This document shows positions 13,893 to 61,714 of a DNA stretch of 64,000 bases, piece by piece. The DNA is taken from positions 124,001 through 188,000 of IMG/VR virus record IMGVR_UViG_3300026292_000003, one strand, 5' to 3'. The notes under the pieces are model-generated. The model had not been told where the DNA came from. It worked only from the letters and a program-made list of their open reading frames with translations, and did not search any database. A program made the translations under genes and the position numbers. Positions within the stretch are counted from its first letter, which is position 1. Each line of letters starts with the position of its first letter.

Positions 13893-13895
13893 TAT

Positions 13896-15029: not shown

Positions 15030-15043
15030 ATAAACAAGATTAT

Positions 15044-15119: not shown

Positions 15120-15120
15120 G

Positions 15121-15195
15121 GCGGGCGTAGCTCAGTGGTAGAGCGATTCGTTGCCAACGAATAGGTCGTCGGTTCGACCCCGATCGCCCGCTCCA
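15121..15195 (+). tRNA. tRNA-Gly(GCC)
   Basis: Cloverleaf, loop ttgccaa, U73 discriminator, CCA. Confidence 0.96.
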
Positions 15196-15201
15196 AATTT
15201 T

Positions 15202-15278
15202 GGCTCTGTAGCTCAGTTGGTTAGAGCATCCGACTCATATTCGGAAGGTCAGAAGTTCGAATCTTCTCAGAGCTACCA
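15202..15278 (+). tRNA. tRNA(CAU): elongator Met or Ile2
   Basis: Cloverleaf, loop ctcatat; lacks initiator features (no C1-A72, no three G-C pairs in the anticodon stem). Confidence 0.93.
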
Positions 15279-15307
15279 AACCGATAAATACATTATAGGA
15301 AAAAATA

Positions 15308-15784
15308 ATGAGAAACATTTATATAATATTAATTTTATCAGCAGTACTTACAATACTTCATTTGTTATATGCTCCAGCAATAGCAAAAGAAATAGAAATG
15401 AAAGTATACAATTACGAAATCACAAGAGTAATTGATGGAGACACAGTAGCATTTGCGGCACCATTTCTTCCAGCACCACTTAAACAAGAATTAAGTATAA
15501 GAGTATATGGAGTTGATACTCCAGAAAAAGGTTGGAGAGCAGAATGTGAGTCAGAAGCAAAATGGGGTGAAAAAGCTTCGCAGTTTACTAAAGATCAATT
15601 AAACAATGCTAAAAAATTACAAGTAGCCATTGCTAAATGGGATAAATTTGGTGGTAGAGTTTTAGGTGATATTATCATTGATGGCAAAAGTCTTAGACGT
15701 ATGCTTATTGAAAATGGATTTGCCAGAGAATATTACGGTGACAAAAAAGAAACTTGGTGTAAGCCAAAAAGACAAAAATCTTAG
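15308..15784 (+). CDS. Staphylococcal nuclease (SNase)-like protein with N-terminal TM/signal
   Basis: VIDGDT, IRVYGVDTPE and DKFGGRVLG. Confidence 0.9.
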   Translation: MRNIYIILILSAVLTILHLLYAPAIAKEIEMKVYNYEITRVIDGDTVAFAAPFLPAPLKQELSIRVYGVDTPEKGWRAECESEAKWGEKASQFTKDQLNNAKKLQVAIAKWDKFGGRVLGDIIIDGKSLRRMLIENGFAREYYGDKKETWCKPKRQKS

Positions 15785-15786
15785 TA

Positions 15787-15815
15787 TTGACATCTAATCA
15801 AAACAATAGTATAAT
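15787..15815 (+). promoter_or_regulatory. Consensus sigma70 promoter for tRNA-Asp/Glu
   Basis: TTGACA-17 bp-TATAAT. Confidence 0.85.
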
Positions 15816-15829
15816 AATAACTTAATTTA

Positions 15830-15906
15830 GGGGGTGTAGCTCAGTTGGTTAGAGCGCCTGCCTGTCACGCAGGAGGTCGAGGGTTCGAGTCCCTTCACTC
15901 TCGCCA
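15830..15906 (+). tRNA. tRNA-Asp(GUC)
   Basis: Cloverleaf, loop ctgtcac, G73, CCA. Confidence 0.96.
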
Positions 15907-15911
15907 CAAAT

Positions 15912-15986
15912 GGTCCCTTCGTCTATCGGTTAGGACACATGGTTTTCATCCATGAAAGAGGAGTTCGATTCTCCTAGGGACTACCA
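15912..15986 (+). tRNA. tRNA-Glu(UUC)
   Basis: Cloverleaf, Glu-type D-arm gtcta..ggac, loop ttttcat, CCA. Confidence 0.95.
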
Positions 15987-16970: not shown

Positions 16971-17691
16971 AACAGAATGTCATTTGCTTATGCATACGGC
17001 TTGTATGAGTGGTAATATGTTTTTATGGTTTATGTCACAACATGATGGATTCTTAGATGGCCAATGTTGGGGTAGAGACAGAATGATAGATAAGTTTTGG
17101 GGACAAAAATCTGAAAAACCTTTACACTTCTCAGTTGAACTTCATAATCTTTGGAAAGTAGTAAAAGGAGAATCAAGAAATACTCCTCACTTACACACAA
17201 ACAATGATACAATAGGTTGGGATGAACACGTTATATATTCGTACATAACTGCCAGTAAAGAAAAAGGAAGAATTAAAAACGTAAAAACTTTTACTAAAAT
17301 TGCCTGTAAGCCTAATTTGTTACACAATGTTAAAGAATGTATGAAAGAAGGTGGCATTGAGCAAATATTTAATAAAGTAACACCAGAATGTTTGTATCTA
17401 TTAGATTGTGAAAACCCAGAACATTTTCAAAGAATAGTTGAAAGAGCAAACAGACTAAGACCGTATGGTGAGTTAAAGAATAAATTATTGTTAGAAGATA
17501 ATTTGGAAGGGCAACGTGAACAAACAGAATTTTTAAAAAAGCATTGTTCTGTATGTACAGTTGATATAGGAAAATTAATGTTTGACTATGATGACAAAGA
17601 ATACAATAAGGTTGCTGAAGCATTAAATTCAAACCCATTAAGAAATTGGAAAGAATTAATTAAGGATAAAATGGACGTATACGATGGCTAA
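16963..17691 (+). CDS. Hypothetical protein, same paralogue family
   Basis: HTACMSGNMFLWFMSQH ... DIGKLMF..EY...P..NW. Confidence 0.55.
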   Translation: MNKTECHLLMHTACMSGNMFLWFMSQHDGFLDGQCWGRDRMIDKFWGQKSEKPLHFSVELHNLWKVVKGESRNTPHLHTNNDTIGWDEHVIYSYITASKEKGRIKNVKTFTKIACKPNLLHNVKECMKEGGIEQIFNKVTPECLYLLDCENPEHFQRIVERANRLRPYGELKNKLLLEDNLEGQREQTEFLKKHCSVCTVDIGKLMFDYDDKEYNKVAEALNSNPLRNWKELIKDKMDVYDG

Positions 17692-18466
17692 AATAAAAGA
17701 AAGAGTATTAGAAGTAAAGCATTATACTGACACATTGTTTTACTTTAAAACAACAAGAGACCCAGGCACTAGATTTATTGATGGTGAATTTATGATGGTA
17801 GGGTTAGATAATTGGTCAGAAAAATTACAAAGAAATAAGCCTATTATGAGAGCTTATAGTGTAGTAAGCCCTAATCATCAAGAACATTTAGAGTTCTATA
17901 GTATTAAAATTCCAGATGGACCACTAACTAGTAAGTTAAAAGATATTAAAATTGGTGACGAAATTGAAGTAAATACAAAAAGTACAGGAACATTAATTAA
18001 TCAAAATATGTTACCTGGACGTAACTTATACTTGATGGCTACAGGTACTGGTATAGCACCATTTATGAGTATTGCTAGAGGATTAGATACTTATAAACAT
18101 TATGAAAAGGTTATTATAGTATGGGGAGCAAGATATTTAAAAGAACTACCTTTTAAAGAATATTTAGAAGGGTTGAACGATGATCCAATATATGGACAGA
18201 TAACACAAAACAAACTTTGTACATATATGACCACTACACGTGAGGAAAGTGAAAACGAAGGACGAGTTACAACCGCACTATACGAAGGTAAGATTCAAAA
18301 GAAACTAGGGCTAGAACCGTTAGATGCGGAAAACGATAGAGTCATGATTTGCGGTTCAATGCCTATGAATTTAGAATTACAAGAATTCTTAGAAGATAAA
18401 GGATTCAAAGAAGGCACCATGAAGGAGCCTGGTACATATGTACTAGAAAAGGCATTTGTAGGATAG
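17684..18466 (+). CDS. fpr: Ferredoxin/flavodoxin-NADP+ reductase (bacterial FPR)
   Basis: RAYS, GPLT, TGTGIAPF, MICGS and C-terminal EKAF. Confidence 0.92.
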   Translation: MAKIKERVLEVKHYTDTLFYFKTTRDPGTRFIDGEFMMVGLDNWSEKLQRNKPIMRAYSVVSPNHQEHLEFYSIKIPDGPLTSKLKDIKIGDEIEVNTKSTGTLINQNMLPGRNLYLMATGTGIAPFMSIARGLDTYKHYEKVIIVWGARYLKELPFKEYLEGLNDDPIYGQITQNKLCTYMTTTREESENEGRVTTALYEGKIQKKLGLEPLDAENDRVMICGSMPMNLELQEFLEDKGFKEGTMKEPGTYVLEKAFVG

Positions 18467-29024: not shown

Positions 29025-29473
29025 AATTAGATAATAGTTCTTATACGGTTACTCCTCCAGATCTAATGTTAACAGAACACGGTGTAAGTATTCTAGTTTC
29101 TAGTACCGACGAAAAGTTAATAAAAAAAGTAAAAGATATATTTGAAAAATATATCGCAACAAGCATTGTATTCTATATACAACAAAAACCAACAAACTCA
29201 AATACCCTACCATGGCTATGGAATGTATCAAAAACTTGTGAATTTATGATCATTGATCTTGATACCTGTGCAGAACCAGATATAATTGCAGGATTAATGA
29301 AATCAAGAGACGGTGAGAATACTGTACTATTTTACAGTGATAAGTACACTAGAAGAGATACAATAAAACTAATAAACGCAACAGGCGAAAATTTAGTAGT
29401 CACTAGGATGGAAGATATACATAACTATATAAGGTTACAAATGAACCCAGAGTATTTTGATGAGACCAAATGA
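29021..29473 (+). CDS. Hypothetical protein
   Basis: 150 aa, coupled. Confidence 0.7.
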   Translation: MKLDNSSYTVTPPDLMLTEHGVSILVSSTDEKLIKKVKDIFEKYIATSIVFYIQQKPTNSNTLPWLWNVSKTCEFMIIDLDTCAEPDIIAGLMKSRDGENTVLFYSDKYTRRDTIKLINATGENLVVTRMEDIHNYIRLQMNPEYFDETK

Positions 29474-30671
29474 TATAATCTGCAATTTTTGCGGAAAAAG
29501 TAGAACCCAAGTAAAAAAATTATTAGCAGGTGAGAATTCTAATCACATCTGTTCAGATTGCGTTGAGCTATGTTATGGTATTCTACAAAACAATGAAGTT
29601 AAAATAGAAAACACAATTCAAAAGAAATTTGTTCTTCCTACACCTAGAGAAATACACAAACATTTAGATGATTATGTTATAAGTCAAGATAAAGCAAAAA
29701 AGACTTTAAGTGTAGCAGTATATAATCATTATAAGAGAATAACATCAAATACAAAAACAAAATTACAAAAAGGCAACGTGTTTATGGCAGGTCCTACAGG
29801 AACTGGTAAAACACTAATGGCACAAACACTAGCCAATCATTTAGATGTACCATTTGTAGTTACTGATGCTACAGTTATTACAGAAAGTGGATACGCAGGT
29901 GAAGATGCAGAAGTGTTAATACACAAATTGTTTCAAGCGGCAGATTATGATATAGAAAGAGCAGAACGTGGAATAATATATATTGACGAAATAGATAAAA
30001 AAGCAAAACGTAATGATTTTGTTAGTTTAAGCAGAGATGTAAGTGGAGAAGGAGTTCAACAAAGTTTATTAAAACTAATAGAAGGTTCTAAAGTAACAGT
30101 ACCTAACAAGCCTCAAAGTAACCCAGAAAAAGTAGTTGTTGATACAACAAATATATTGTTTATTGTTGGTGGTGCATTTGTTGGGTTAGATGAAGTAGTT
30201 GCTAATAGACTTGGTAAATCAAAAATTGGTTTTAATGGCGAAGAAGGACATAAGATAGAAAATTGGACAGATTACTTACAAACTAAAGACTTGGTAAAGT
30301 ATGGATTAATACCAGAGTTTATTGGTAGATTTGCAAGTACTAACGTGTTAAGTAATTTAACCAAGGAAGACCTGGTAAAGATATTAATAGAACCAAAAGA
30401 TGCTATAGTAGAGCAGATCAAAGAGTTATTTTTACTTGACAAAATACAAATAGAGTTTAAAATGGAAGCATTGGAAGAGGTAGCAGATATAGCAATAAAA
30501 GAAGAAATTGGAGCCAGAGGGTTACGTAAGATACTCGATGGTGCATTACTTGAATTGCAATATAGATTACCAGAATTATTTAACGAAGGTATAAGAAAAA
30601 TTATTATTACAAAGAATGTTATTTCTAAAAACGAAGAACCACACTATATCAAAGGCAAAAATGCAACATAA
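29457..30671 (+). CDS. clpX: ATP-dependent Clp protease ATP-binding subunit ClpX
   Basis: C4 zinc finger, GPTGTGKT, IDEIDK, RDVSGEGVQQ and IGF loop. Confidence 0.96.
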   Translation: MMRPNDIICNFCGKSRTQVKKLLAGENSNHICSDCVELCYGILQNNEVKIENTIQKKFVLPTPREIHKHLDDYVISQDKAKKTLSVAVYNHYKRITSNTKTKLQKGNVFMAGPTGTGKTLMAQTLANHLDVPFVVTDATVITESGYAGEDAEVLIHKLFQAADYDIERAERGIIYIDEIDKKAKRNDFVSLSRDVSGEGVQQSLLKLIEGSKVTVPNKPQSNPEKVVVDTTNILFIVGGAFVGLDEVVANRLGKSKIGFNGEEGHKIENWTDYLQTKDLVKYGLIPEFIGRFASTNVLSNLTKEDLVKILIEPKDAIVEQIKELFLLDKIQIEFKMEALEEVADIAIKEEIGARGLRKILDGALLELQYRLPELFNEGIRKIIITKNVISKNEEPHYIKGKNAT

Positions 30672-32695: not shown

Positions 32696-33124
32696 ATGAA
32701 AATAGGATTTACTTGTTCAACATTTGATTTACTACACGCCGGGCATATTGCTATGTTGCGAGAAGCTAAAGCACAATGTGATTATTTAATAATAGGATTG
32801 CAAACAGATCCTACAATAAGCAGACCAACAAAGAATTCACCTATACAAACAGTTGTAGAAAGATATACACAATTAAAAGCAGTAGGGTATGTAGATGAAA
32901 TAATTCCATATACTACTGAACAAGATTTAGAAGATATACTTTCTATGTATAATATTGATGTAAGGGTATTAGGAGAAGAATATAGAGAAAAAGATTTTAC
33001 AGGAAAAGATATCTGTAAGCAGAGAGATATTGCTCTATACTTTAATAAGCGAGATCACAGGTTCAGTTCAACAGAATTGAGGCAACGTGTTAACACAAAG
33101 GAAATGAAAAATGAGAGTGCGTGA
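32696..33124 (+). CDS. Cytidylyltransferase (TagD-like)
   Basis: TFDLLHAGH (HIGH-like), GLQTDP and RFSST. Confidence 0.88.
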   Translation: MKIGFTCSTFDLLHAGHIAMLREAKAQCDYLIIGLQTDPTISRPTKNSPIQTVVERYTQLKAVGYVDEIIPYTTEQDLEDILSMYNIDVRVLGEEYREKDFTGKDICKQRDIALYFNKRDHRFSSTELRQRVNTKEMKNESA

Positions 33125-34232
33125 AGAAGTTAAACTAAATTTTGAAGATGTATTAATGGAACCAAAACGTTCTACATTAGGTAGTAGACGTGACGTACAA
33201 ATGACTAGAAAGTTTACATTTAGAAACTCTGGTAAAGTGATTGACTTCTGTCCTATATTTGCTAGTAATATGGATGGTGTAGGTACATTTGAAGTAGCTA
33301 AAGTATTACAAGAACATAAAATGATGACTGTAATTACAAAAAGTACACCACTAGAAGAATGGAAAGCGGCCGCTGGTACAGGTTTAAGAATGCAAAGTAT
33401 AAGTGTATGTACAGGTACAAATAAAATGTGGGACCCAGATGCACCAGACTATGCTAATATGAAAGCAGTACTAGAAGCATTTCCTGATGTAAAAATGATT
33501 ACTGTAGATGTTGCTAATGCTTATCACGAGAATTTTGTAGACTTTATTAAGATGATTAGAGATGAATATCCTGATAAAGTTATTGTAGCAGGTAACGTAG
33601 TTACACCAGAGATGGTAGAAGAATTAATTATAAACGGTGCTGACGTAGTTAAAATTGGTATTGGACCAGGCTCAGTATGTACAACAAGAACAATGACAGG
33701 TATTGGAGTACCACAGTTTTCAGCTATATTAGAATGTGCAGATGCGGCAAATGGCGTTGATGGACATATTATGGCAGATGGTGGTTGTGTACACCCAGGA
33801 GATATTGCAAAAGCACTTGGTGGTGGAGCTCATATGGTTATGATAGGTGGTATGTTAGCAGGACACAAAGAAGGTGGTGGTAAACTTATCACTAAACATA
33901 CAGCCACAGGTGGTGCGTATAAAACACCTGAGGGAACATATGTTCCTTATTATGAAGAACAACAGTTTGTTGAGTTCTACGGAATGAGTTCAGATCGTGC
34001 TAGAGAGAAGCATGGCAAACGAAAAGATGGATATAGAGGTAACGAAGGTAGACATATTGTTATGCCTTACAGAGGACCTATTAATGACACAGTTGAGAAT
34101 ATACTAGGTGGTGTTAGATCAGCGGCCACTTATATTGGAGCAAGACGTTTAAAGGATATGCCAAAGTGTGCAACATTCGTAAGAACAAATAATGTTATCA
34201 ATAGAACTTACGAGCAATTCACAGTAAAATAA
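33111..34232 (+). CDS. guaC: GMP reductase
   Basis: VDVANAY, KIGIGPGSVCTTR, ADGG, FYGMSS, ILGGVRSA. Confidence 0.92.
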   Translation: MRVREEVKLNFEDVLMEPKRSTLGSRRDVQMTRKFTFRNSGKVIDFCPIFASNMDGVGTFEVAKVLQEHKMMTVITKSTPLEEWKAAAGTGLRMQSISVCTGTNKMWDPDAPDYANMKAVLEAFPDVKMITVDVANAYHENFVDFIKMIRDEYPDKVIVAGNVVTPEMVEELIINGADVVKIGIGPGSVCTTRTMTGIGVPQFSAILECADAANGVDGHIMADGGCVHPGDIAKALGGGAHMVMIGGMLAGHKEGGGKLITKHTATGGAYKTPEGTYVPYYEEQQFVEFYGMSSDRAREKHGKRKDGYRGNEGRHIVMPYRGPINDTVENILGGVRSAATYIGARRLKDMPKCATFVRTNNVINRTYEQFTVK

Positions 34233-37190: not shown

Positions 37191-37724
37191 ATGAAAGGTT
37201 TAAAGATACCGTCAGTTACTTTTAGAGTTAGACAAGGTGACGAAGAAGTACCGGGAGAAGCTGGTTGTCCTATTGGAGGAGAATGGATTACTACAACAAC
37301 AGATGATTACTTCAAAGGTAAACGTATTGTATTGTTTAGTTTACCAGGTGCATTTACACCAACTTGTTCCTCAAAGCAGTTACCGGGTTTTGAAGGAAAT
37401 TATGAGACAATTAAGGCAAAAAACATTGATGAGATTTACTGCATAAGTGTAAATGACAGTTTCGTTATGAATGCTTGGGCAGAAAAAATGCAAATTAAAA
37501 ATGTTAAAATGATTCCAGATGGCTCAGGAAACTTTACTAGGTTTATGGGTATGCTAATTGGAAAGAACCATTTAGGATTTGGAATGCGTAGTTGGAGATA
37601 TATGGCAGTTATTAACGATGGAGTTGTTGAACATTGGTGGCAAGAACCAGGAATCAATAACGAAGGTGATGATAACGATCCATATGGAGAAACTTCTCCA
37701 GAAAATTTAATGAAAACTTTATAA
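37191..37724 (+). CDS. Peroxiredoxin (Prx5-like)
   Basis: LPGAFTPTCS, SVNDSFVM, DGSGNFT, RSWRY. Confidence 0.93.
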   Translation: MKGLKIPSVTFRVRQGDEEVPGEAGCPIGGEWITTTTDDYFKGKRIVLFSLPGAFTPTCSSKQLPGFEGNYETIKAKNIDEIYCISVNDSFVMNAWAEKMQIKNVKMIPDGSGNFTRFMGMLIGKNHLGFGMRSWRYMAVINDGVVEHWWQEPGINNEGDDNDPYGETSPENLMKTL

Positions 37725-38259: not shown

Positions 38260-38279
38260 AAAATTAATCCACAATTCGG

Positions 38280-38309
38280 TTGACAATTAAACTTTTACGT
38301 GTATAAATA
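38280..38309 (+). promoter_or_regulatory. Overlapping sigma70-like and late promoters for tmRNA
   Basis: TTGACA-16-TATAAA with TATAAATA at 38302-38309. Confidence 0.65.
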
Positions 38310-38314
38310 TACAA

Positions 38315-38600
38315 GTAAGCGATGAAGCGACTTAACGGTAGACTGGACCTCGGGGCAGTACCGAGCAGGTCCACCATAAACACTTTGTAGTTACCAGAAC
38401 TAGATGGTACCCTAAAGTAAGGACAGACGCAGAGTGTTTATGATGGGCCTGAATTAGGATCGACAGATATTATAGGGAAGTGGAGTTTACCGGGTGATTG
38501 CGTAATTGATCAAATTTTATAAACGCAGAAGATAATTTTGCAATAGCGGCCTAATTTAGGCACGTAGGGGTGGGAACTACCTGGCAACAGAAGTGCCACT
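38315..38600 (+). ncRNA. ssrA: Circularly permuted two-piece tmRNA (alphaproteobacterial type)
   Basis: Acceptor piece ends caggtcc-a-cca (38366-38376) with T-arm ctcgg/ggcagta/ccgag; 68-nt intervening segment; coding piece starts gggcctg (38445) with G3-U70; tag AEDNFAIAA* at 38525-38554. Confidence 0.9.
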
Positions 38601-38665
38601 GTATTCTTTAGAATTCAGTTACTACAAAAAGATAAACTTCTTATCTTTATATCAAGGAAATATAT

Positions 38666-39259
38666 ATGAAATATATAATGACAGCGGCGTTCGTCGCTTT
38701 TATGTTTTCTACTGCTAACGCAGAAGATTACAACAATACATCAATAACTATGGCCGCAGAAGGACCTGAATATGGTGTAGAATTATCAACAAATGACACT
38801 ACAAGAAAAGTAAGTGTCTACAATACTAATGGCGCATTAGATCTAGGAGTACAGTTATTAGATAACGGCACTAACACAGATTTTAATGTATCTGTTGGTA
38901 AGACTATCGATAGAAATATTGGAATGGCAGAATCACCATTAGCTACAGTTTATGTATCTGCAGAAGCTGAGTATAATTGGGGCGATAGTTTTACTAAAAA
39001 CGAAATGCATTTTACTCCTAAAATTGGAGCTAAAAAAGCTATTGGAAACCTAACACCATTTGGTGAAATAGGTTACGGTCTAAAATCAATTGAAGGTGAT
39101 TATCTTGATATTGATAGAGACACACCGTTTGCTGAAATCGGTACATCAGTTGGTCTAACTGATAATACGTCATTAAAAGCATCAGTAACACAATCAATGA
39201 ATACTGATTGGGAAAAGACTGATCGTGAAATTGGACTAAAGCTGACAGTTCAGTTTTAA
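38666..39259 (+). CDS. Putative outer-membrane beta-barrel protein
   Basis: Signal peptide (ANA), alternating amphipathic strands and C-terminal Phe. Confidence 0.7.
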   Translation: MKYIMTAAFVAFMFSTANAEDYNNTSITMAAEGPEYGVELSTNDTTRKVSVYNTNGALDLGVQLLDNGTNTDFNVSVGKTIDRNIGMAESPLATVYVSAEAEYNWGDSFTKNEMHFTPKIGAKKAIGNLTPFGEIGYGLKSIEGDYLDIDRDTPFAEIGTSVGLTDNTSLKASVTQSMNTDWEKTDREIGLKLTVQF

Positions 39260-39304: not shown

Positions 39305-39340
39305 GATAAATATTATAGACAGGCAAGAGGAGATTTTATC

Positions 39341-40420
39341 ATGCCGCCTAGAAATCATAAAAATTGGTTAGCAAAACCAAACGTAGAATATGTAAGTAGT
39401 GAAATATATTCAGATCAAAAAATTTTCGAAGAAGAAATAAAACATATCTTTAGTAAGGTATGGGTACCAGTATGCCATACAAGTGAAATGAATATGACTG
39501 GTTGTTTTAGAACAACACAAATTGCATTTCAAAATATAATTGTTATTAAATTTAGTAGTGGAATTGTTAGAGCATTTCATAATAAAGATGTAACAAAAGT
39601 ATCAGGTATGGATATGTCGCTTTGTTATCATGCATTAAGTTGGAAAGAATTGCCGTGCGAAATAAAGCATGGTGGAATGGTATGGGTAACTTTAGATACA
39701 GAAACAACACAGAGTGTAGATCAATGGACGGCTGGTGCATTTGATTGTATTAGTGATGCAATTGATGCAGAAGACTTAGAAGTATTTCATTACCATAAAG
39801 CAATTATACCAACAAACTATAAACTATGGCATGATACAAATAGTGAATTTTATCATGACTTTATGCATTATTTTAATAGAGTAACTGGTTTTAATGATGA
39901 ATATTTTGCTAGAAAAAATATTCCATTTGATAACGGTCACGTAAATGTAAGTAGCTTTACAGTTAATTATACAGAATTTAATAAAGATGGTGACCGAGGA
40001 GAATTAAGTTTTCCTAACTTACCACCAAACCAATGGTATATGGTAGACTTGTTTCCAGGGTTTAATTTTAATTTGCGTGGTAGTGCGTATCGTAGTGATA
40101 GTGTTACTCCACTAGGGCCTAATAGCACACTTATAGAGTTTAGGGGCTATGGGCTAGAAAAAGATACTAAAGAAGAACGTGAAACTCGTATCAAACATCA
40201 CAATACTATATGGGGACCTTTTGGACGTAATTTGCACGAAGACTTAATTGGAGTTACAGGGCAAGGAGTATCAATGGCAGAAGGCACAGAAAAAAGAAAC
40301 ATTTTACATGGTAGGCACGAAAATGGAACTATACATGATGAGGTTGGTATGAGGCATTATTACGCAGAGTGGGGAAAACACGTAAACTTAGATCCTTCTA
40401 ATCCTATTATTAGTACTTGA
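39341..40420 (+). CDS. Ring-hydroxylating oxygenase alpha-subunit-like protein (MsmA-like), Rieske motif degenerate
   Basis: IFSKVW, RAFHN, NYKLWHDTNSEFYHDFMH and NLHED; no CxH-x(15-26)-CxxH; AGGAG RBS then ATG 39341. Confidence 0.8.
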   Translation: MPPRNHKNWLAKPNVEYVSSEIYSDQKIFEEEIKHIFSKVWVPVCHTSEMNMTGCFRTTQIAFQNIIVIKFSSGIVRAFHNKDVTKVSGMDMSLCYHALSWKELPCEIKHGGMVWVTLDTETTQSVDQWTAGAFDCISDAIDAEDLEVFHYHKAIIPTNYKLWHDTNSEFYHDFMHYFNRVTGFNDEYFARKNIPFDNGHVNVSSFTVNYTEFNKDGDRGELSFPNLPPNQWYMVDLFPGFNFNLRGSAYRSDSVTPLGPNSTLIEFRGYGLEKDTKEERETRIKHHNTIWGPFGRNLHEDLIGVTGQGVSMAEGTEKRNILHGRHENGTIHDEVGMRHYYAEWGKHVNLDPSNPIIST

Positions 40421-40450: not shown

Positions 40451-40527
40451 GGACCATTAGCTCAGCTGGATAGAGCGCCTGTCTACGGAACAGGAGGCCA
40501 GGAGTTCGAATCTCTTATGGTCCGCCA
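40451..40527 (+). tRNA. tRNA-Arg(ACG)
   Basis: Cloverleaf, A20, loop ctacgga, CCA. Confidence 0.96.
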
Positions 40528-40543
40528 AAAGATAAATAGACGA

Positions 40544-40945
40544 GTGAAACTGCTAGAGCATAAGCATATTATAATAAGAGCGGAAGTACTTGATCCGCCA
40601 CGTGCAGAAAACCCTACAAGTGAACAAGTAAAAACTCTGATCAATGATATTGGAATGAAAATTATGATGGGTCCTTTTGCCCAAAGATCAGAAATGGTAG
40701 GTAATGCAGGACTTACAGTAGCAACAATTATAGAAACATCACACGTAATACTACATACCTGGGATGAAGTGCATCCAGCATTAATGCAATTAGATGTTTA
40801 TACTTGCAGTCATTTAGATCCTAAAATAGTTTTTAAATGGCTAGAACAATTCAAGCCAACCAAAATAGATTACAAATATATTGATAGGGAATTTAAGTTA
40901 GATCTTAAACGGAAAAAGATACCTTTCCATATTGAACAGGATTAG
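40544..40945 (+). CDS. S-adenosylmethionine decarboxylase-like proenzyme (class 1b)
   Basis: GLTVATIIETSHVILHTW and QLDVYTCS; GTG 40544 (the ORF-track start lies inside the tRNA). Confidence 0.8.
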   Translation: MKLLEHKHIIIRAEVLDPPRAENPTSEQVKTLINDIGMKIMMGPFAQRSEMVGNAGLTVATIIETSHVILHTWDEVHPALMQLDVYTCSHLDPKIVFKWLEQFKPTKIDYKYIDREFKLDLKRKKIPFHIEQD

Positions 40946-43843: not shown

Positions 43844-43920
<77 letters not shown>

Positions 43921-43926
43921 ATTTAT

Positions 43927-44012
43927 GCGAGTGTGGCGGAATAGGTAGACGCAACGGACTTAAAATCCGTTATCTTTATGGTGTGTGGGTTCGAGTCCCT
44001 CCACTCGCACCA
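43927..44012 (+). tRNA. tRNA-Leu(UAA)
   Basis: Cloverleaf with long variable arm, loop cttaaaa, CCA. Confidence 0.96.
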
Positions 44013-45937: not shown

Positions 45938-47125
45938 TTGACTCAGAATAATCACAGCACTAGTTGGTGTCCTATACCGTTTAATGCTATTTCGTTTCAC
46001 CCAACCGGCAATTTAACTCGTTGTATGATGAGCAATACGCCGATGGGTGAAACCTTTGACAGCCCTCAGATGCAAAAACTGCGTCATGATATGTTGGCTG
46101 GCACCTGGGATAAAGAAGGGTGTATGACTTGTTGGAAAAAAGAACAACAAGGTAATATAAGTCAAAGACAAAAGTGGTTACAACGTAGTCCCTCAGATTT
46201 CAAAAATACAGATGGATTTATAAAACCAAAAATAACAGGAAACCCTGTTAATCACCTTTTTATTAACTATAGCAATATATGTAATTTTAAGTGTAGAATG
46301 TGTGGACCAGATTATAGTACTAGTCTAATACCAGAGCATAAACATTTACATACAATAGGATTACGTAAAGAAGTAAAAATAGAAAATATTAAAAATAGAA
46401 ATTTTATTAATACATATCTAAAAGAAAATCCAGAAAGTTTAAAAGATGTAACTAGTATATGGATAACAGGTGGCGAACCCTTTATGGACGATAACTGTTA
46501 TGATTTAATTGACATACTAGCTGAAAATGGAAATGAATTTGAAACAGATATGGTTATTACTACAAATGGCTCTAAAGTAGATTTAGATAAGTTACAAAAA
46601 TTTGAGAATTTAAAATTCTTTGAATTAGATTTAAGTATTGATGCACCTAATACTATGTTTGAGTATATGCGTAGTGCAGGCGTATTTACTTGGGATCAAA
46701 TGAGTAAGTTAATTGATGATTTAACTTATTTTAAAAAACAGAATAGTAGTTGGTTTCATATGTGTTTTAATGCTAGTATACAAGCATATAATTACGATAC
46801 AATACTTGAATTTGATTCAGTATGTAGGAAAGCAGGAGCATTGAACAATACTAGAATGTTAATATTTCCAGAACATTTTAGACTCAACGTACTACCTTAT
46901 AAATATAGAAAAGAACAATTTGATAAAATCTATGATTATAAAGTAGTAAATGATCCAAGGTTTAAAAGAACTCATATGGATATATGCAAAAATCTTTTAC
47001 AAGAACAAGCAAATGAAACTGTAATCAGTAGATTTAAAGAACTTACGATAGCACAAGACAAGTATAGAAAAATGTCTATAAAAGACTTCCATCCACGGTT
47101 AGCGGAGTTTATATATGAAAAATAA
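45938..47125 (+). CDS. Radical SAM protein with N-terminal twitch/SPASM-like domain
   Basis: CNFKCRMC, GGEPF, TTNG; N-terminal WCPIPF..RC..C..C. Confidence 0.88.
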   Translation: MTQNNHSTSWCPIPFNAISFHPTGNLTRCMMSNTPMGETFDSPQMQKLRHDMLAGTWDKEGCMTCWKKEQQGNISQRQKWLQRSPSDFKNTDGFIKPKITGNPVNHLFINYSNICNFKCRMCGPDYSTSLIPEHKHLHTIGLRKEVKIENIKNRNFINTYLKENPESLKDVTSIWITGGEPFMDDNCYDLIDILAENGNEFETDMVITTNGSKVDLDKLQKFENLKFFELDLSIDAPNTMFEYMRSAGVFTWDQMSKLIDDLTYFKKQNSSWFHMCFNASIQAYNYDTILEFDSVCRKAGALNNTRMLIFPEHFRLNVLPYKYRKEQFDKIYDYKVVNDPRFKRTHMDICKNLLQEQANETVISRFKELTIAQDKYRKMSIKDFHPRLAEFIYEK

Positions 47126-48428
47126 TCAAAATGAAAACGGCTTATGGAGATTTGATCCAAAAAAGCACGTAGTTCCTGCTGACCAAATAGAAACAAAAGT
47201 AGTTGAAAACGATCAATGGAAAAATATACACAGTAACAGTTGGTGTCCAATTCCGTTTAATACAATAAGCTGGCATCCTAGTGGGCATATATCAAGATGT
47301 ATGATGAGTGACGACAATATGGGAACTCATTATGACAGTGAACATATGCAAAGGTTAAGAAGAGATATGTTAGCTGGTAAGTGGGATACTTATGGATGTA
47401 CTAGCTGTCTTAACAAAGAAAAGAAAGGTTATCGTAGTCAACGTATGAGTTGGCTAAGACATGATAAGATTAAGCATCTAGGAAATCCAGAACCTTATCG
47501 TAATCCAAAATTAACCGGTAATCAGATAAGTCATTTGTTTATTAATTTTTCAAATGTATGTAATTTTAAATGTAGAATGTGTAGTGCAAACTTTAGTAAT
47601 AGTTTGATACCTGAAAACAAGCATATGTTAGAAAAATTTCCACTTGAATATAAAAAGGTTCCACTTCAGAATCAAAAAAACTTTAATGATATTATTGGAT
47701 ATTTAGAAAAGAACTTAGACATACTACCTGGTATAAAAAGTATTTGGATGACAGGAGGAGAGCCCTTCATGACTGATGATCCATACAAACTGATTGACTT
47801 AATTGTAGAACACGGCAAGCCAGAAGAACTTGATATAGTTATTACTACAAATGGATCAAAATTAGATTTTGAAAAGTTAGAAAAGTTTAACAAAGTTAAA
47901 AAATTAACATTAGATTTAAGTATTGATGCAGTAGGACCTTTGTTTGAATATATGAGAAGTAATAAGGTTTATACTTGGAGTCAAATGGAAAATACTTGTG
48001 GTAAATTATATGAATATAAAAAAGTAAATAAGAAATGGTTTGATTTTTTTATTAATAGCAGTTACCAAATATTTAATTATGATAACTTATTAGAATTTTA
48101 CGATTTTATATATGATCATAAATGTGAAAGTAATATAAGAATGTTAATGTTTCCTGAACATTTTAGAGTGGGTAACTTGCCAAAAGTATTTAAAGATGAA
48201 GCTAGAGCAATGTGTGATAAGATAGAATTAAGGTATGGAAATAGAAATGTACATAAGATTAAAATTCTAGATGATATTAGAACTGCATTAGATATTGAAG
48301 AACCTTACTTACATAGAACTTTAAGAGTAGTACCAGAACAAGATAAATTTAGAGGAGTATACTTAACTGACTATCACGATAAACTAGCTGACTTAATATA
48401 TGGACCAAAACAATTATGCCTGTTTTAA
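47115..48428 (+). CDS. Radical SAM protein with N-terminal twitch domain (tandem paralogue)
   Basis: CNFKCRMC, GGEPF; closely similar to the upstream gene. Confidence 0.88.
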   Translation: MKNNQNENGLWRFDPKKHVVPADQIETKVVENDQWKNIHSNSWCPIPFNTISWHPSGHISRCMMSDDNMGTHYDSEHMQRLRRDMLAGKWDTYGCTSCLNKEKKGYRSQRMSWLRHDKIKHLGNPEPYRNPKLTGNQISHLFINFSNVCNFKCRMCSANFSNSLIPENKHMLEKFPLEYKKVPLQNQKNFNDIIGYLEKNLDILPGIKSIWMTGGEPFMTDDPYKLIDLIVEHGKPEELDIVITTNGSKLDFEKLEKFNKVKKLTLDLSIDAVGPLFEYMRSNKVYTWSQMENTCGKLYEYKKVNKKWFDFFINSSYQIFNYDNLLEFYDFIYDHKCESNIRMLMFPEHFRVGNLPKVFKDEARAMCDKIELRYGNRNVHKIKILDDIRTALDIEEPYLHRTLRVVPEQDKFRGVYLTDYHDKLADLIYGPKQLCLF

Positions 48429-53453: not shown

Positions 53454-54114
53454 TCCTTGGTATATTCTTGGCGTTGAACCTAACGCATCGCTTACCGCGA
53501 TAAAAAAAGCATATAAAAGATTAGCAATTAGAATGCACCCAGACAAAGGTGGCTCTGTAGCTGATTGGTTAAATGTAAGTCAAGCATATGAAAAGATTTT
53601 AAAGAAAGAACACGTACCTGTAAAGAAAGGTAAAGATGTTAAATATGTTGATATATACTTAACTATACAACAACAAATAAATGGTTTTGAAGGCTTTGTA
53701 GTAATAGATGAAGAAAAAGAATTATATTTAAAAGTAAAAATACCAGCAGGTGCATTAAGAAATGATAAGTTTAGAGTAATACACAATGCTAAAAAGTACA
53801 TTATAAATATTAAAGAAAAAGCAGATAAAGTCTTTACAAGACAAGGAAATAATGTTATAGTATATAAAAAGTTAGATATAATAGACATAATGAAACAAAA
53901 ACCGTTTGTTGTTATATCTCCTTTAGGTGAATATCTCGAAGTACAAATTCCACCAAATACAGATTCTGGAAGTATAATTGTCGTAAAAGGACAAGGCTTA
54001 TACAACAGAAGAACAAAGAAAAGAGGAAACTTAAGAATTAACGTGAAAGTAAATATACCCACAGTGAACAAAGATAATGTTCAACAAATTATAAAAAGAT
54101 TAAAAGATGACTGA
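53437..54114 (+). CDS. DnaJ/CbpA-like co-chaperone
   Basis: J-domain with HPD and DnaJ C-terminal domain (GQGL..RGNL); no zinc finger. Confidence 0.88.
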
Positions 54115-56368
54115 TATAGAAAAAATTGTTATAACTGCTATTAACCTAGCAAAGAAATTTAGACACGAGTATGTTACTATTGAACATTTGTCGGCTGTTA
54201 TATTAGATGACCCAGAAGTTCAAGCAATGTGTTATGAAGTACAAGCAGATCATGAACAGTTACAAATTTCATTAGTAAATTATTTAGAGCATGATTGTAA
54301 AGAATTAATAAAAAGTAAAAAAGAAGAACCTAATCCATTTAAGACTCAAATGTTAGAAAGGGTTTTTAACAGAGCATTAACTCAAGCATTGTTTCAAGGT
54401 AAGAAAGCAATTAATCAGTTAGATTTAGTATTAAGTATATTAGGTGAAGAACATAGTGTTGCGGCAACATATGCAGATCAATGTGGACTTAATAAAAATA
54501 AAGTTATGGCTTGGATGCAAGATACAGCTCAAGCACAAATTGATACAATATTTACAGCCATGCCACCAGGTATGGATCCTTATGGACACAATGGTCCACA
54601 AACTCCACTTGCAGTATTAAATCAATATTGTAATAATCTAAATGAAGCAAGTCAAGACTTTGATGATGTAGTAGGGCGTAGAGATGTGTTAAGAGATTTA
54701 GTTCAAACTGTAGCACGTAAGAAAAAATCAAATGCAGTATTAACAGGAGGCAGTGGTGTAGGTAAAACAGCCATTGTACAAGGATTAGCAAAATTAATTG
54801 TAGAAGGTAAAGTTCCTGAAGTTATAAAAAGTAAAACTGTATGGGAACTTGATATGACAAAACTAGTAGCTGGTACAAAATACAGAGGTGACTTTGAAGA
54901 ACGTATGAAGCAATTAGGAGAAGCATTACGAAAACAACCAGACATTATTTTATTCATAGATGAGATACATCAAATAATTGGTGCAGGTAGTACAAATCAA
55001 TCAATGGACGCAGGTAATATGTTAAAGCCTGCATTAGCAAGTGGAACATTAAAAGTTATTGGTGCTACAACAGATGAAGAATATAGAAGAGTATTTGAGA
55101 AAGAAACTGCATTAGCACGTAGGTTTACAAAAGTATCAGTAGATGAACCTAGTGTAAAAGATGCTAAAGAAGTATTAAAACATACTATAGTTTCTTATGA
55201 AGGATATCATGATGTAGAAATTACAGATGAGGCTTGTGAACTAGCAGTTGATTTAAGTCATCAATATATGTTTAATAAAAAGTTACCAGATAAAGCATTT
55301 GACATAGTTGATAGAGCCTGTGCATATAATACAATATTACCAGTAAAAGATAGATTAAAGGTTATTGGTGTAGATGAAATTAGAGCAGAAGTATCTAAAC
55401 TTACTACAATACCTGAAGAACATTTAGGACTTTCAAAAGATAAAGAAACTGCTACTAAACATAGCGAAGTAAGATCATTCTTAGAAAAAACTGTATTTGG
55501 ACAACAAGGTGCTATTAATCGTGTAGTTGATAGTATTACAGTTAGTATGGCAGGATTAAAAGATCCTGTTAAACCTATTGCAAGTTATTTGTTTACTGGT
55601 CCAACTGGTGTTGGTAAAACAGAATTAGCAAAAAGATTAGCACAAGCAATGACTATGAAACTGGTACGTTATGATATGGCAGAATATCAAGAACGTCATA
55701 CAGTATCAAAACTTATTGGATCACCTCCAGGATATGTAGGGTTTGCAGATGGAAAAGCAGGTGATGGTTTATTAATTACACAACTAGAAGATAATCCAAA
55801 TTGTGTACTATTATTAGACGAAGTAGAAAAAGCACACCCAGACTTAATGAGTGTATTATTAAGTTTATTAGACGAGGGTACAATTACAAGTAGTACTGGT
55901 AAAATAGTAAATGCAAAAAATGCAATAATTATTATGACTAGTAACTTAGGTGCCAGAGATGCGTCAATTAAAAGTATAGGTTTTAACGAAGAAACTTATA
56001 ATCACAAAGCAGTAGATGAAGCAATAAACAATTACTTCTCGCCAGAATTTCGTAATAGGCTTGATGGTATAGTAAAATTTAATTCATTATCACGTGAGAA
56101 TATGAACAGTATTGTTATTAAATTCTTAAATGAATTAGAGAGTTATGTAGCTCAAAGAAACATAGAAATTTCTTGGGGTCCTGCATTACAAACTATGCTA
56201 GAAGATAAAGGGTATGATCCTCAGATGGGAGCAAGGCCTTTAGCAAGACTAATTAACGAAAAAGTAAAACTTCCATTAGCTAAATACTTACTAGATAGAG
56301 AAGGTAAGAAAAAGCTAAACTTAACAGTTGATTGGAAGAAAGACGAGCTAGTAATTAATGGAAAATAA
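54107..56368 (+). CDS. clpA: ClpA-type AAA+ unfoldase
   Basis: Clp N-domain, two AAA modules (GSGVGKT, KYRG, FIDEIH; [18 protein letters not shown]), IGF loop; no ClpB M-domain. Confidence 0.9.
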
Positions 56369-60805: not shown

Positions 60806-61714
60806 ATGATATCTAAAAACGACTTTGTCGTACTTACAGAAGACGGACAAATCAAATCAACACAAACTCATTTCCTTATTAAGAATAATCTTACAGATTT
60901 TATAAGATGGGATTGCGAAGTATTTTCACACACAAAGAATATCAATTCACAAACTGGTAAAACAGGTTACACAGCCTGTGGTAATAAATCTACAACTTGT
61001 AACGTAGGAATATGCTCGTGTCCTACTGATATATATTTGCCTAAAGGTTTAAACGAGCATTGGCTTTTTTTATTAAGAGAAAAAGTTAGAAAATTATCTA
61101 CAAATGACATATTAGATAGTTACCAATTAGAAGATGGTAAAATTGTTGCTTGTGGTCAACTAGGATTATTAGTTAATACAAAATTTGTAGTAGACTGGAA
61201 CTTATTAAGAAGATGTAATTTTTCTTGTACCTATTGTGCTCCAGATATACACAGTTATACAAGTGAGTTTCCACCTTTTGAACAATTACAAAAAGAATTT
61301 AATGATATAAAAATTCCACAAGGTAAAGAAGCATATTTTAACCTAAATGGTGGTGAACCAACATTACACCCAAATATATTTGACATAGTAAAAATGTGTT
61401 ACAATGTTGGACACGTAGAACTATTATCAAATGGAACTGCTTCAGTTTCAATGTATAATGATTTACTTGATTATACTAAAATTAATATAAGTTTACACCA
61501 CGAATTAATTAACGAAAAACATATGAAAAAATTTGTTAAAATAGCTGAATTAAATAAAGGTGAATTAGTGTTTAAATACTTTAATACATTTGACGAAGAA
61601 AAATACAAAGAATACTTGGATAAATTATCAACATTTAACCATGTATCAATTATTACCAACAAACGTCTTATCTTACGTGGTCAACGTAACCAAGATAAAT
61701 CTTGGGCAACATAG
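60806..61714 (+). CDS. Radical SAM protein with N-terminal Cys-rich module
   Basis: CNFSCTYC, GGEPTLHP and LSNG. Confidence 0.85.
   Translation: MISKNDFVVLTEDGQIKSTQTHFLIKNNLTDFIRWDCEVFSHTKNINSQTGKTGYTACGNKSTTCNVGICSCPTDIYLPKGLNEHWLFLLREKVRKLSTNDILDSYQLEDGKIVACGQLGLLVNTKFVVDWNLLRRCNFSCTYCAPDIHSYTSEFPPFEQLQKEFNDIKIPQGKEAYFNLNGGEPTLHPNIFDIVKMCYNVGHVELLSNGTASVSMYNDLLDYTKINISLHHELINEKHMKKFVKIAELNKGELVFKYFNTFDEEKYKEYLDKLSTFNHVSIITNKRLILRGQRNQDKSWAT

What the first reader, a model, noticed from the sequence alone, without database searches (positions are those of the whole stretch)
39341..40420. Rieske-less ring-hydroxylating oxygenase subunit (MsmA-like)
Seen: the catalytic domain keeps the mononuclear Fe ligands (EFYHDFMH, NLHED), but after RAFHN the CxH-x(n)-CxxH Rieske motif is replaced by a short segment with only non-canonical CYH..CEIKH. 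No beta subunit or ferredoxin is adjacent, and an FPR is encoded 21 kb away. The similarity to methanesulfonate monooxygenase MsmA is recalled, not searched. Known: in these oligomers electrons pass from one subunit's Rieske centre to the neighbour's Fe. Inference: it may join host oligomers to boost, redirect or inhibit organosulfur/C1 oxidation.
Basis: partly seen in the sequence, partly recalled or inferred. Interest (0 to 1): 0.7.

Follow-up and report, generated by a model that had tools for sequence, protein, structure and literature searches.

The report
Phage-borne catalytic half of methanesulfonate monooxygenase
A large marine phage carries only the iron-containing catalytic half of the enzyme that splits methanesulfonate; the matching electron-feeding half is found in SAR116 bacteria but in no phage, so this common "viral sulfur gene" probably works only when plugged into a host partner.

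Summary
Window 39341-40420 (+) encodes a 359-aa protein that is 56% identical end to end to canonical MsmA. One 48-residue gap removes CPHR-x26-CMFH, the whole Rieske cluster site. H172, H176, D301 and the bridging E169 are invariant in 195 distinct relatives.

The gene is not new. It is 67.6% identical to ORF61 of SAR116 phage HMO-2011, and the missing Rieske motif in phage and virome "MsmA" was noted in 2015 (PMC4433239). At least 584 IMG/VR contigs carry it.

I found no published account of the partner. In SAR116 chromosomes the same Rieske-less protein ("MsmA-C") sits in the msm operon. There it lies beside a ~800-aa fusion ("MsmA-R") with an intact MsmA Rieske domain, a catalytic domain stripped of its iron motifs, and an FAD reductase. 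The two genes co-occur in 14 of 15 carrier genomes out of 192. Phages carry only MsmA-C. A complex model (0.82 against 0.00 for controls) puts the MsmA-R Rieske ligands against the phage protein's iron site.

Best reading: a half-enzyme that needs a host Rieske partner, like NdmC with NdmD. This is inferred, not shown, and this phage's host is unknown.

The parts
39341..40420 (+). Gene for the Rieske-less MsmA paralogue ('MsmA-C'), 359 aa plus stop. It is the catalytic-only alpha-type subunit of methanesulfonate monooxygenase.
   Evidence: ORF. Pfam PF00848. 56% identity to canonical MsmA. 67.6% identity to HMO-2011 ORF61. AF2 model with pLDDT 91, whose best PDB matches are TPADO, CntA and NagG alpha subunits.
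39320..39340 (+). Ribosome-binding site AGAGGAG, about 8 nt before the ATG.
   Evidence: Read directly from the sequence.
39461..39583 (+). Retained N-terminal strands of the former Rieske domain (aa 41-81, ending in RAFHN).
   Evidence: Matches Rieske profile positions 2-41 of 88 only. Aligns to CntA up to the residue before its CxH.
39584..39670 (+). Short variable segment (aa 82-110) that replaces the two cluster-binding loops. This is the site of the 42-48-residue deletion.
   Evidence: Gap in BLASTP against canonical MsmA and in alignment A2. It is the least conserved part of the protein, with block conservation of 0.39-0.52 over aa 71-100. C95 and H97 are not conserved.
39830..39868 (+). 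Iron-site motif HDTNSEFYHDFMH (aa 164-176): the His ligands H172 and H176, and E169 at the position of the bridging carboxylate.
   Evidence: 100% conserved in 195 sequences. H172 and E169 align with the CntA iron-ligand His and the Glu three residues before it. H172 touches the Rieske His of MsmA-R in the complex model.
40229..40243 (+). NLHED (aa 297-301). D301 is the probable carboxylate ligand of the mononuclear iron.
   Evidence: 100% conserved. It aligns with the conserved D of 'GHDDL' in PDB chain 9o71_A. This stretch is deleted in the Rieske-bearing paralogue MsmA-R.

Best explanation
The gene encodes MsmA-C, the catalytic-only half of a two-gene ('split') methanesulfonate monooxygenase hydroxylase.

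What SAR116 bacteria have. The ancestral MsmA alpha subunit exists there as two paralogues that have decayed in complementary ways.
- MsmA-R keeps the MsmA Rieske centre (CPHR-x26-CMFH). It has lost the iron-binding motifs and is fused to an FAD-dependent ferredoxin-reductase domain.
- MsmA-C has lost the Rieske loops and keeps a nearly invariant mononuclear-iron active site.

Inferred mechanism. In Rieske oxygenases the Rieske centre of one alpha subunit feeds the iron of its neighbour. A mixed MsmA-R / MsmA-C oligomer, with beta subunit MsmB and Rieske ferredoxin MsmC, would restore one complete electron path. That path runs NAD(P)H to FAD, to the ferredoxin, to the MsmA-R Rieske centre, across E169/H172 to the iron of MsmA-C, and on to O2 activation. 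The reaction is methanesulfonate to formaldehyde plus sulfite.

Role of the phage copy. Phages carry only MsmA-C. The phage copy would therefore add to or replace the host's catalytic subunit during infection and depend on host MsmA-R, MsmB and MsmC.

Shown versus inferred.
- Shown: the anatomy, the homology, the operon context, the co-occurrence, and the absence of partner genes from phages.
- Inferred: physical pairing, the substrate, the benefit to the phage, and that this jumbo phage's unknown host has MsmA-R.
For: Homology.
- 56% identity to canonical MsmA, with a single 48-aa gap at the Rieske site.
- RHO alpha fold: pLDDT 91, Foldseek E about 1e-21 to TPADO and CntA.

Selection.
- The catalytic half is 95-100% conserved per column in 195 sequences.
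- The vestigial Rieske segment is at 39-52%.

Host locus L009, on a 606-kb Puniceispirillum contig. Gene order:
- the 815-aa MsmA-R fusion (Rieske + Pyr_redox_2 + Reductase_C)
- MsmB
- Rieske ferredoxin
- a 274-aa gene of unknown function
- MsmA-C
- LysR
- TauE
- C1-folate genes

MsmA-R anatomy.
- It is about 80% identical to MsmA across the Rieske half.
- It lacks LWHDTNSEFYHDFMHY, GRNLHEDL..GQG and ILHGRxENxTIHDE.
- Its vestigial catalytic domain is still predicted to fold.

Conservation of the arrangement. The same gene order is seen in 10 SAR116-type loci.

Co-occurrence in 192 genomes of that order.
- MsmA-C is in 15 genomes, MsmA-R in 15, and both in 14.
- Canonical MsmA is in only one other genome.
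- In the carrier genomes where both places were listed, the two genes lie 4-12 kb apart on one contig.

Phylogeny. All Rieske-less proteins form one clade (99), separate from canonical MsmA.

Phages carry only MsmA-C.
- Nothing else from the operon is in the 221-kb record.
- Nothing else is in 80 IMG/VR loci totalling 883 kb.
- Nothing was found in a motif scan of IMG/VR for MsmA-type Rieske sites.

Complex model of phage MsmA-C with host MsmA-R(1-400).
- ipSAE is 0.82, against 0.00 for the best of 3 controls.
- That mark was reached by 51 of 78 solved complexes and 2 of 108 mismatched pairs.
- Partner pLDDT is at least 72, and the three runs agree in at least 59% of contacts.
- D165, Y171 and H172 of MsmA-C lie against residues 88-97 (with C91, H93) and 121-124 (with H123; the fourth ligand C120 lies just before) of MsmA-R.

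Precedent. In NdmCDE the oxygenase lacks the Rieske cluster and the reductase carries it (PMC4408171).
Against: - No experiment shows binding or activity.
- The complex score may reflect the model's memory of solved Rieske-oxygenase trimers. It cannot tell hetero- from homo-oligomers.
- A ring trimer made of R and C subunits would have only one productive Rieske-to-iron pair. The real stoichiometry is unknown.
- The host of this jumbo phage is unknown. Its tmRNA gave no host match, and its capsid protein resembles jumbo phages of diverse hosts.
- Only about 8% of SAR116-order species carry MsmA-R. MsmA-C diversity (at least 1240 clusters at 90% identity) far exceeds that of MsmA-R (about 40 clusters). 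Some phages may therefore meet hosts without a partner.
- The record is about 60% complete, so a partner gene could lie in the missing part.
- No transcripts of this exact gene were found.
Confidence: 0.6

Rival explanations
1. Autonomous oxygenase. MsmA-C needs no Rieske centre in the hydroxylase. Its iron is reduced directly by a soluble donor, such as a host or phage ferredoxin or flavodoxin, or the phage FNR-like protein. It would then work in hosts that have no msm genes.
For: - MsmA-C is far more diverse and widespread than MsmA-R.
- Only 15 of 192 SAR116-order genomes have MsmA-R.
- The gene occurs in at least two unrelated phage types: 57 of 89 loci are HMO-2011-like and 32 are not.
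- An FNR-like gene lies in the same window at 17684-18466.
- A NifU-like gene follows the gene in the related jumbo-phage loci L082-L085.
Against: - In cells MsmA-C is almost never found without MsmA-R (14 of 15).
- E169, at the bridging-carboxylate position, and the surface predicted to dock the Rieske loops are invariant.
- No Rieske-independent member of this fold was found in the literature searched. Even NdmC uses a Rieske cluster supplied in trans.
- Phage sequence diversity normally exceeds host diversity, so cluster counts are a weak argument.
Confidence: 0.15
2. Decoy or dominant-negative subunit. The phage protein enters host oligomers to shut down or redirect methanesulfonate oxidation.
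For: A subunit without a Rieske centre could interrupt inter-subunit electron transfer in a canonical alpha3 enzyme. This follows from general Rieske-oxygenase architecture (established knowledge). The predicted interface is compatible with it.
Against: - The iron ligands and the whole active-site region are 100% conserved in 195 sequences. A pure blocker would not need them.
- The same architecture is a normal, syntenic operon member in SAR116 chromosomes.
- The published dN/dS for viral msmA is below 1.
Confidence: 0.07
3. Same scaffold, different chemistry. The split enzyme acts on a substrate other than methanesulfonate, such as another small sulfonate or methylated compound.
For: - No member of the Rieske-less clade has been assayed.
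- All strains proven to grow on methanesulfonate have the CXH-X26-CXXH form.
- H110 is invariant in the Rieske-less clade but is F or Y in canonical MsmA.
Against: - The catalytic half is about 70-75% identical to canonical MsmA.
- The SAR116 operon keeps MsmB, MsmC, the sulfite exporter TauE and C1-folate genes, as expected for formaldehyde plus sulfite products.
Confidence: 0.1

Closest known systems
ORF61 of Puniceispirillum (SAR116) phage HMO-2011, annotated 'methanesulfonate monooxygenase hydroxylase alpha subunit', and the viral msmA auxiliary metabolic gene family
   Same: - 67.6% identity over 99% of the length.
- Same length and same Rieske deletion.
- Same clade.
- The lack of the Rieske motif in this phage and in virome 'MsmA' is already published (PMC4433239).
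   Different: - The window's copy sits in a jumbo myovirus with a T4-type capsid protein, not in a 55-kb podovirus.
- It lies among other metabolic genes rather than beside the lysis genes.
Canonical MsmA of the msmABCD methanesulfonate monooxygenase (Methylosulfonomonas, Filomicrobium and others)
   Same: - 54-56% identity end to end, and about 70-75% in the catalytic half.
- Same iron-site motifs.
   Different: - It lacks the defining CXH-X26-CXXH Rieske site.
- No msmB, msmC or msmD lies nearby.
- It cannot receive electrons in the canonical way from copies of itself.
NdmC / NdmD / NdmE N7-demethylase of Pseudomonas putida CBB5
   Same: An oxygenase subunit with non-heme iron but no Rieske cluster is paired with a reductase that carries the Rieske cluster (PMC4408171). 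This is the same logic as MsmA-C paired with the MsmA-R fusion.
   Different: - The origin is independent. Here both halves keep a vestige of the missing domain, which points to duplication followed by complementary decay rather than a clean split.
- The reductase is of the Pyr_redox_2 / Reductase_C type. NdmD instead has an FMN-binding domain and two [2Fe-2S] clusters.
- A beta subunit and a separate Rieske ferredoxin remain.
- No GST-like NdmE was seen.
- One half has moved into phages.
Cyanophage psbA (D1): a phage copy of one subunit of a host multi-subunit redox enzyme
   Same: The phage carries a single catalytic subunit that can only work inside host-encoded machinery. This comparison comes from my own knowledge and is only an analogy.
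   Different: The protein family and process are unrelated. Turnover or damage of MsmA-C has not been studied.

Membership tests
Rieske non-heme iron oxygenase alpha subunit (PF00355 + PF00848) | Catalytic domain of the Ring_hydroxyl_A type and the overall alpha-subunit fold | tested here: met
   PF00848 at aa 144-347, 33.4 bits against a cut-off of 24.9. Foldseek matches to TPADO, CntA and NagG with E 1e-21 to 1e-19 and TMq 0.70-0.77.
Rieske non-heme iron oxygenase alpha subunit (PF00355 + PF00848) | 2-His-1-carboxylate iron site | tested here: met
   H172, H176 and D301 are invariant. H172 aligns with the CntA ligand His, and D301 with the conserved D in 9o71. Metal binding itself was not measured.
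Rieske non-heme iron oxygenase alpha subunit (PF00355 + PF00848) | Rieske [2Fe-2S] site CxH...CxxH in the N-terminal domain | tested here: not met
   Only profile positions 2-41 of 88 are matched, at 14.1 bits against a cut-off of 20.3. A 48-aa gap covers both motifs. The residual Cys/His are not conserved.
MsmA (methanesulfonate monooxygenase large subunit) | Close full-length homology to MsmA of methanesulfonate-operon bacteria | tested here: met
   56% identity to Filomicrobium insigne MsmA. The Rieske-less clade is sister to canonical MsmA in the tree.
MsmA (methanesulfonate monooxygenase large subunit) | CXH-X26-CXXH signature, held by the field to be diagnostic (PMC4433239) | tested here: not met
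   Absent.
MsmA (methanesulfonate monooxygenase large subunit) | msmABCD operon context | tested here: not met
   No msmB, msmC or msmD in the 221-kb phage record. The cellular orthologues do lie in a modified msm operon.
MsmA (methanesulfonate monooxygenase large subunit) | Methanesulfonate-dependent oxygenase activity | not testable with these tools
   Needs reconstitution and an assay.
Viral msmA gene family (HMO-2011 ORF61 type) | About 350-360 aa, PF00848 only, high identity, encoded on phage DNA | tested here: met
   At least 584 IMG/VR contigs. Same clade.
Split Rieske oxygenase of the NdmCDE kind (works-like comparison) | The oxygenase lacks the Rieske cluster and the cluster is carried by the reductase polypeptide | tested here: met
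   The first half is met in the phage protein. The second half is met only in SAR116 host loci, where MsmA-R is Rieske + Pyr_redox_2 + Reductase_C. It is not met in the phage.
Split Rieske oxygenase of the NdmCDE kind (works-like comparison) | GST-like structural subunit (NdmE) and homology to NdmC/NdmD | not tested
   The 274-aa gene between MsmC and MsmA-C has no Pfam match. It was not compared with NdmE. I do not file this system as a member of the Ndm family.

The most novel reading that the evidence does not exclude
MsmA-C is a truly Rieske-independent oxygenase. Its mononuclear iron would be reduced directly by a soluble donor, so phages could install methanesulfonate (or related) oxidation in hosts that have no msm genes at all. 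That would be a new operating mode for the Rieske-oxygenase fold. It would also mean that viral msmA counts in ocean surveys reflect real stand-alone sulfur and C1 flux.
Probability: 0.12. Interest if true: 0.8.

Novelty: new member of a known kind. Interest (0 to 1): 0.5.

Why it matters
Viral msmA is routinely counted in ocean viromes as a gene that lets phages degrade methanesulfonate. The sequence shows that it cannot do this alone, because it has no way to receive electrons in the manner of a Rieske oxygenase.

Finding the complementary half gives a concrete model. That half is a Rieske-only MsmA fused to a reductase, named only 'FAD-dependent oxidoreductase' in databases. It lies in the same SAR116 operon. 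The model can be tested in an existing culturable pair, phage HMO-2011 and Ca. Puniceispirillum marinum IMCC1322.

If the model is right, three things follow.
- SAR116 methanesulfonate monooxygenase is a second, independent case of a split Rieske oxygenase after NdmCDE.
- The viral gene is host-restricted to cells that carry the partner.
- Surveys should score the MsmA-R / MsmA-C pair rather than 'msmA' alone.

Tried and rejected
- Longer TTG start at 39269. Rejected because there is a strong ribosome-binding site before the ATG at 39341 and all homologues start MPPRNHK or MPARNHK.
- 'CYH..CEIKH' as a degenerate cluster site. Rejected because C95 and H97 are not conserved and C106 is also present in canonical MsmA, where it is not a ligand.
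- PHROGs gave nothing useful. NCBIfam matched only the N-terminal 60-70 residues to GbcA, AntA and HcaE models, far below their cut-offs.
- Host assignment by BLAST of the phage tmRNA against 401 alphaproteobacterial genomes. It gave only 33-56-nt patches.
- Host or kin assignment from the RNR and the major capsid protein. The nearest isolates are jumbo phages of unrelated hosts at 57-70% identity.
- Expression evidence. Four metatranscriptomes hold exact pieces of the neighbouring outer-membrane-protein gene. Inside this gene they hold only short patches at 90-95% identity, which come from relatives. That is not evidence of transcription of this copy.
- A conserved phage-encoded partner next to the gene. 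The frequent downstream neighbour (56 of 89 loci) is an HMO-2011 ORF60-like protein with a C-terminal membrane helix, followed by the lysozyme. This reflects lysis-region synteny, not a redox partner, and it is absent from the window.
- Direction of transfer between phage and SAR116. The tree does not resolve it. HMO-2011 branches first, but on a long branch.
- Kang et al. 2013 (PMC3725092) is not held in the library.
Full report
**What is in the window**

Window 39341-40420 (+) is a clean ORF of 359 codons. A ribosome-binding site AGAGGAG lies 8 nt before the ATG, and a hairpin follows the preceding gene.

Pfam finds the catalytic domain of ring-hydroxylating oxygenase alpha subunits (PF00848, aa 144-347). 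It finds only the first 41 of 88 positions of the Rieske domain, below the cut-off.

PDB sequence searches align the N-terminus with carnitine monooxygenase CntA up to "RAFHN". This is exactly where CntA continues with its first CxH. About 32-40 residues are then missing.

An AlphaFold2 model is confident (pLDDT 91.2, pTM 0.90). Its best structural matches are the alpha subunits of terephthalate dioxygenase, CntA and salicylate 5-hydroxylase, with E 1e-21 to 1e-19.

**The MsmA similarity is real**

Against MsmA of Filomicrobium insigne, which sits in a standard msmA-msmB-msmC-msmD-tauE operon, the phage protein is 56% identical from residue 1 to 355. There is one large gap of 48 residues. It removes CPHRGM, the 26-residue spacer typical of MsmA, and CMFHAW.

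I assembled 195 distinct members of the Rieske-less family from the window, metagenome clusters, viral contigs and SAR116 chromosomes. Their conservation pattern is:
- Catalytic half: 95-100% conserved per column.
- H164, D165, E169, H172, H176, H299, E300, D301: invariant.
- Segment that replaces the Rieske loops: the least conserved part, at 0.39-0.52.
- H97: present in 68 of 195.
- C106: present in 151 of 195, and also a Cys in canonical MsmA, where it is not a ligand.

There is therefore no cluster site.

H172 and E169 align with the CntA iron-ligand His and the Glu three residues before it. From memory of the CntA literature, these are H208 and the bridging E205. D301 aligns with the conserved Asp of another Rieske oxygenase.

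**The replicon**

The window is bases 124001-188000 of a 221,643-bp linear IMG/VR virus record, estimated to be 60% complete.
- It has a T4-type major capsid protein that is 65-70% identical to those of jumbo phages such as Phosso, PA5oct and Vibrio phage 2.275.O.
- It has a terminase.
- It has 11 tRNAs and an alphaproteobacterial-type permuted tmRNA.
- It has many metabolic and chaperone genes.
- Nowhere in the record is there a Rieske domain, a beta subunit, an MsmC- or MsmD-like gene, or an MsmA-R.

**Already known**

The best match among sequenced phages is ORF61 of SAR116 phage HMO-2011, at 67.6% identity. It is annotated as methanesulfonate monooxygenase alpha subunit.

Henriques and De Marco (PMC4433239) wrote in 2015 that the Rieske motif is absent from three sets of sequences:
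- the HMO-2011 protein;
- many GOS and virome "MsmA" sequences;
- one of the two "MsmA" proteins of the host, Ca. Puniceispirillum marinum IMCC1322.

Reviews and surveys treat viral msmA as a sulfur-cycle auxiliary gene. They describe it as marine only and under purifying selection.

The family is very common. There are at least 1240 clusters at 90% identity and at least 584 IMG/VR contigs. Of 89 phage loci examined, 57 share HMO-2011's downstream ORF60-like gene and/or its lysozyme gene. The other 32, including the window, are other phage types.

**What explains it**

A scan of one genome per prokaryote species found two groups of relatives:
- Proteins of about 403 aa with the Rieske site, at 54-56% identity, in Hyphomicrobiaceae, Beijerinckiaceae, Microvirga and others. 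This is canonical MsmA.
- Proteins of about 351 aa without it, at 70-78% identity, in SAR116/Puniceispirillum chromosomes, for example on a 606-kb contig.

The second group also includes a few contigs in unrelated bins. Two of these bins were searched whole and hold no other msm gene, and one of the two contigs is itself an IMG/VR viral record.

In the SAR116 loci the gene order is conserved:
- an 795-857-aa fusion;
- an MsmB-like beta subunit;
- a Rieske ferredoxin;
- a 274-aa gene of unknown function;
- the Rieske-less MsmA;
- a LysR regulator;
- the sulfite exporter TauE;
- C1-folate genes.

The N-terminal half of the fusion is about 80% identical to MsmA through the Rieske domain, with CPHR-x26-CMFH intact. 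Its catalytic domain has lost LWHDTNSEFYHDFMHY, GRNLHEDL..GQG and ILHGRxENxTIHDE. It continues into a Pyr_redox_2 / Reductase_C ferredoxin reductase.

The two paralogues are therefore complementary. "MsmA-R" keeps the Rieske centre. "MsmA-C" keeps the iron site. Each keeps a fast-evolving vestige of the other domain:
- In MsmA-R, identity among SAR116 orthologues is 72-81% in the Rieske part, 35-50% in the dead catalytic part, and 63-77% in the reductase.
- The vestigial catalytic domain of MsmA-R is still predicted to fold.

In 192 genomes of the SAR116 order, MsmA-C occurs in 15, MsmA-R in 15, and both in 14. In the carrier genomes where both places were listed, the two genes lie 4-12 kb apart on one contig. 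A canonical 424-aa MsmA occurs in one other genome.

The carriers have no full-length MsmA. The only intact MsmA active site and the only MsmA Rieske centre are on different polypeptides.

**Mechanism**

In Rieske oxygenases electrons pass from the Rieske centre of one alpha subunit to the iron of the adjacent one, through a bridging carboxylate. This is established knowledge. A mixed MsmA-R / MsmA-C assembly would restore that path, and E169 at the bridging position is invariant in MsmA-C.

I ran a complex prediction of the phage MsmA-C with SAR116 MsmA-R residues 1-400.
- The score was ipSAE 0.82 in all three runs, against 0.00 for the best of three controls.
- That mark was reached by 51 of 78 solved complexes and 2 of 108 mismatched pairs.
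- Partner pLDDT was at least 72, and the runs agreed in at least 59% of contacts.
- D165, Y171, H172 and residues 303-333 of the phage protein lie against MsmA-R residues 88-97 (holding C91 and H93) and 121-124 (holding H123; the fourth ligand, C120, lies just before).

This is the canonical head-to-tail geometry. The tool warns that such a pass may come from memory of solved homologues, and it cannot distinguish hetero- from homo-oligomers. I count it as consistency, not proof.

The design has a precedent. NdmC lacks a Rieske cluster and uses one carried by its reductase NdmD (PMC4408171).

**Phages carry only the catalytic half**

No MsmA-R, MsmB, MsmC, reductase, TauE or LysR was found in any of the following:
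- the 221-kb record;
- 80 IMG/VR loci totalling 883 kb;
- a scan of IMG/VR with the MsmA Rieske-motif patterns, whose hits were again Rieske-less proteins.

MsmA-R is rare and poorly annotated, with about 40 clusters labelled "FAD-dependent oxidoreductase".

In the tree all Rieske-less proteins form one clade (support 99), apart from canonical MsmA. The SAR116 chromosomal copies are monophyletic (98). The window groups with metagenomic sequences from large phages. The direction of transfer is not resolved.

**Conclusion**

The gene is the catalytic-only half of a split methanesulfonate monooxygenase. It most likely works by pairing with a host-encoded Rieske/reductase half (confidence 0.6).

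Why a phage would carry only this half is inference. It may supplement or replace a limiting or damage-prone catalytic subunit, to keep sulfite, reducing power or C1 units flowing during infection.

Weak points:
- There is no biochemistry.
- The stoichiometry is unknown.
- The host of this jumbo phage is unknown.
- The phage record is incomplete.
- The partner is rare among hosts.

These leave room for an autonomous, Rieske-independent mode (0.15), a different substrate (0.1), or a decoy role (0.07). The decoy role is disfavoured by the invariant active site.

**Novelty**

The window's gene is a new member of a known and already annotated viral gene family, and its missing Rieske motif is published. 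The complementary MsmA-R partner and the split-enzyme reading were not found in the literature I could search. That search does not cover subscription journals, and Kang et al. 2013 was not available.

Noticed in passing
window 38260-38602 (+): The phage carries an alphaproteobacterial-type, circularly permuted tmRNA (Rfam alpha_tmRNA 97 bits, tmRNA_permuted 98 bits; tag peptide AEDNFAIAA). BLAST against 401 alphaproteobacterial genomes found only 33-56-nt patches, so it gives no host assignment.
   Followed up: partly
window 13219-15986, 40451-40527, 43844-44012: There are eleven tRNA genes, eight of them clustered at 13.2-16.0 kb. One tRNA-Arg(ACG) lies 30 nt after the MsmA-C stop codon.
   Followed up: no
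window 38666-39259 (+): A phage outer-membrane beta-barrel protein (PF24653) lies directly upstream. Exact pieces of it (340 nt and 203 nt with no differences) are present in two marine metatranscriptome assemblies, unlike the MsmA-C gene.
   Followed up: partly
window 17684-18466, 29457-30671, 33111-34232, 37191-37724, 40517-40945, 45938-48428, 54107-56368, 60806-61714: The region is dense in host-like metabolic and chaperone genes: an FNR-like reductase, ClpX, an IMPDH/GMP-reductase family protein, a peroxiredoxin, an AdoMet decarboxylase, two adjacent radical-SAM proteins, a ClpB-like AAA+ protein, and a third radical-SAM protein.
   Followed up: no
L082-L085 9102-9482: In related jumbo-phage contigs (up to 340 kb) a NifU_N / IscU-like iron-sulfur scaffold gene directly follows the Rieske-less MsmA gene. 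A ribosomal protein S21 gene and two 2OG-Fe(II) oxygenase genes lie nearby.
   Followed up: no
G002:C5:71188-73571 (genome of locus L014): In one SAR116 genome MsmA-R is two adjacent ORFs: a 341-aa Rieske part and a 491-aa reductase. It is either an unfused form or a frameshift.
   Followed up: no
L056 4964-10300; also L042, L051: Some marine Rhodospirillales loci have a full-length canonical MsmA but no MsmD. L056 has instead a separate reductase 57% identical to the MsmA-R reductase domain. This could be an evolutionary intermediate toward the fusion.
   Followed up: no
L009 6921-7745: A 274-aa protein without a Pfam match lies between MsmC and MsmA-C in all SAR116 loci. It has 28-40% homologues downstream of msmD in many canonical soil msm operons, so it may be an unrecognised msm accessory gene.
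   Followed up: no
window 39668-39670 (aa H110): H110 (in EVKHGG) is invariant in all 195 Rieske-less proteins. The same position is F or Y in canonical MsmA and in MsmA-R. It is a clade-specific substitution next to the deletion, and its meaning is unknown.
   Followed up: partly
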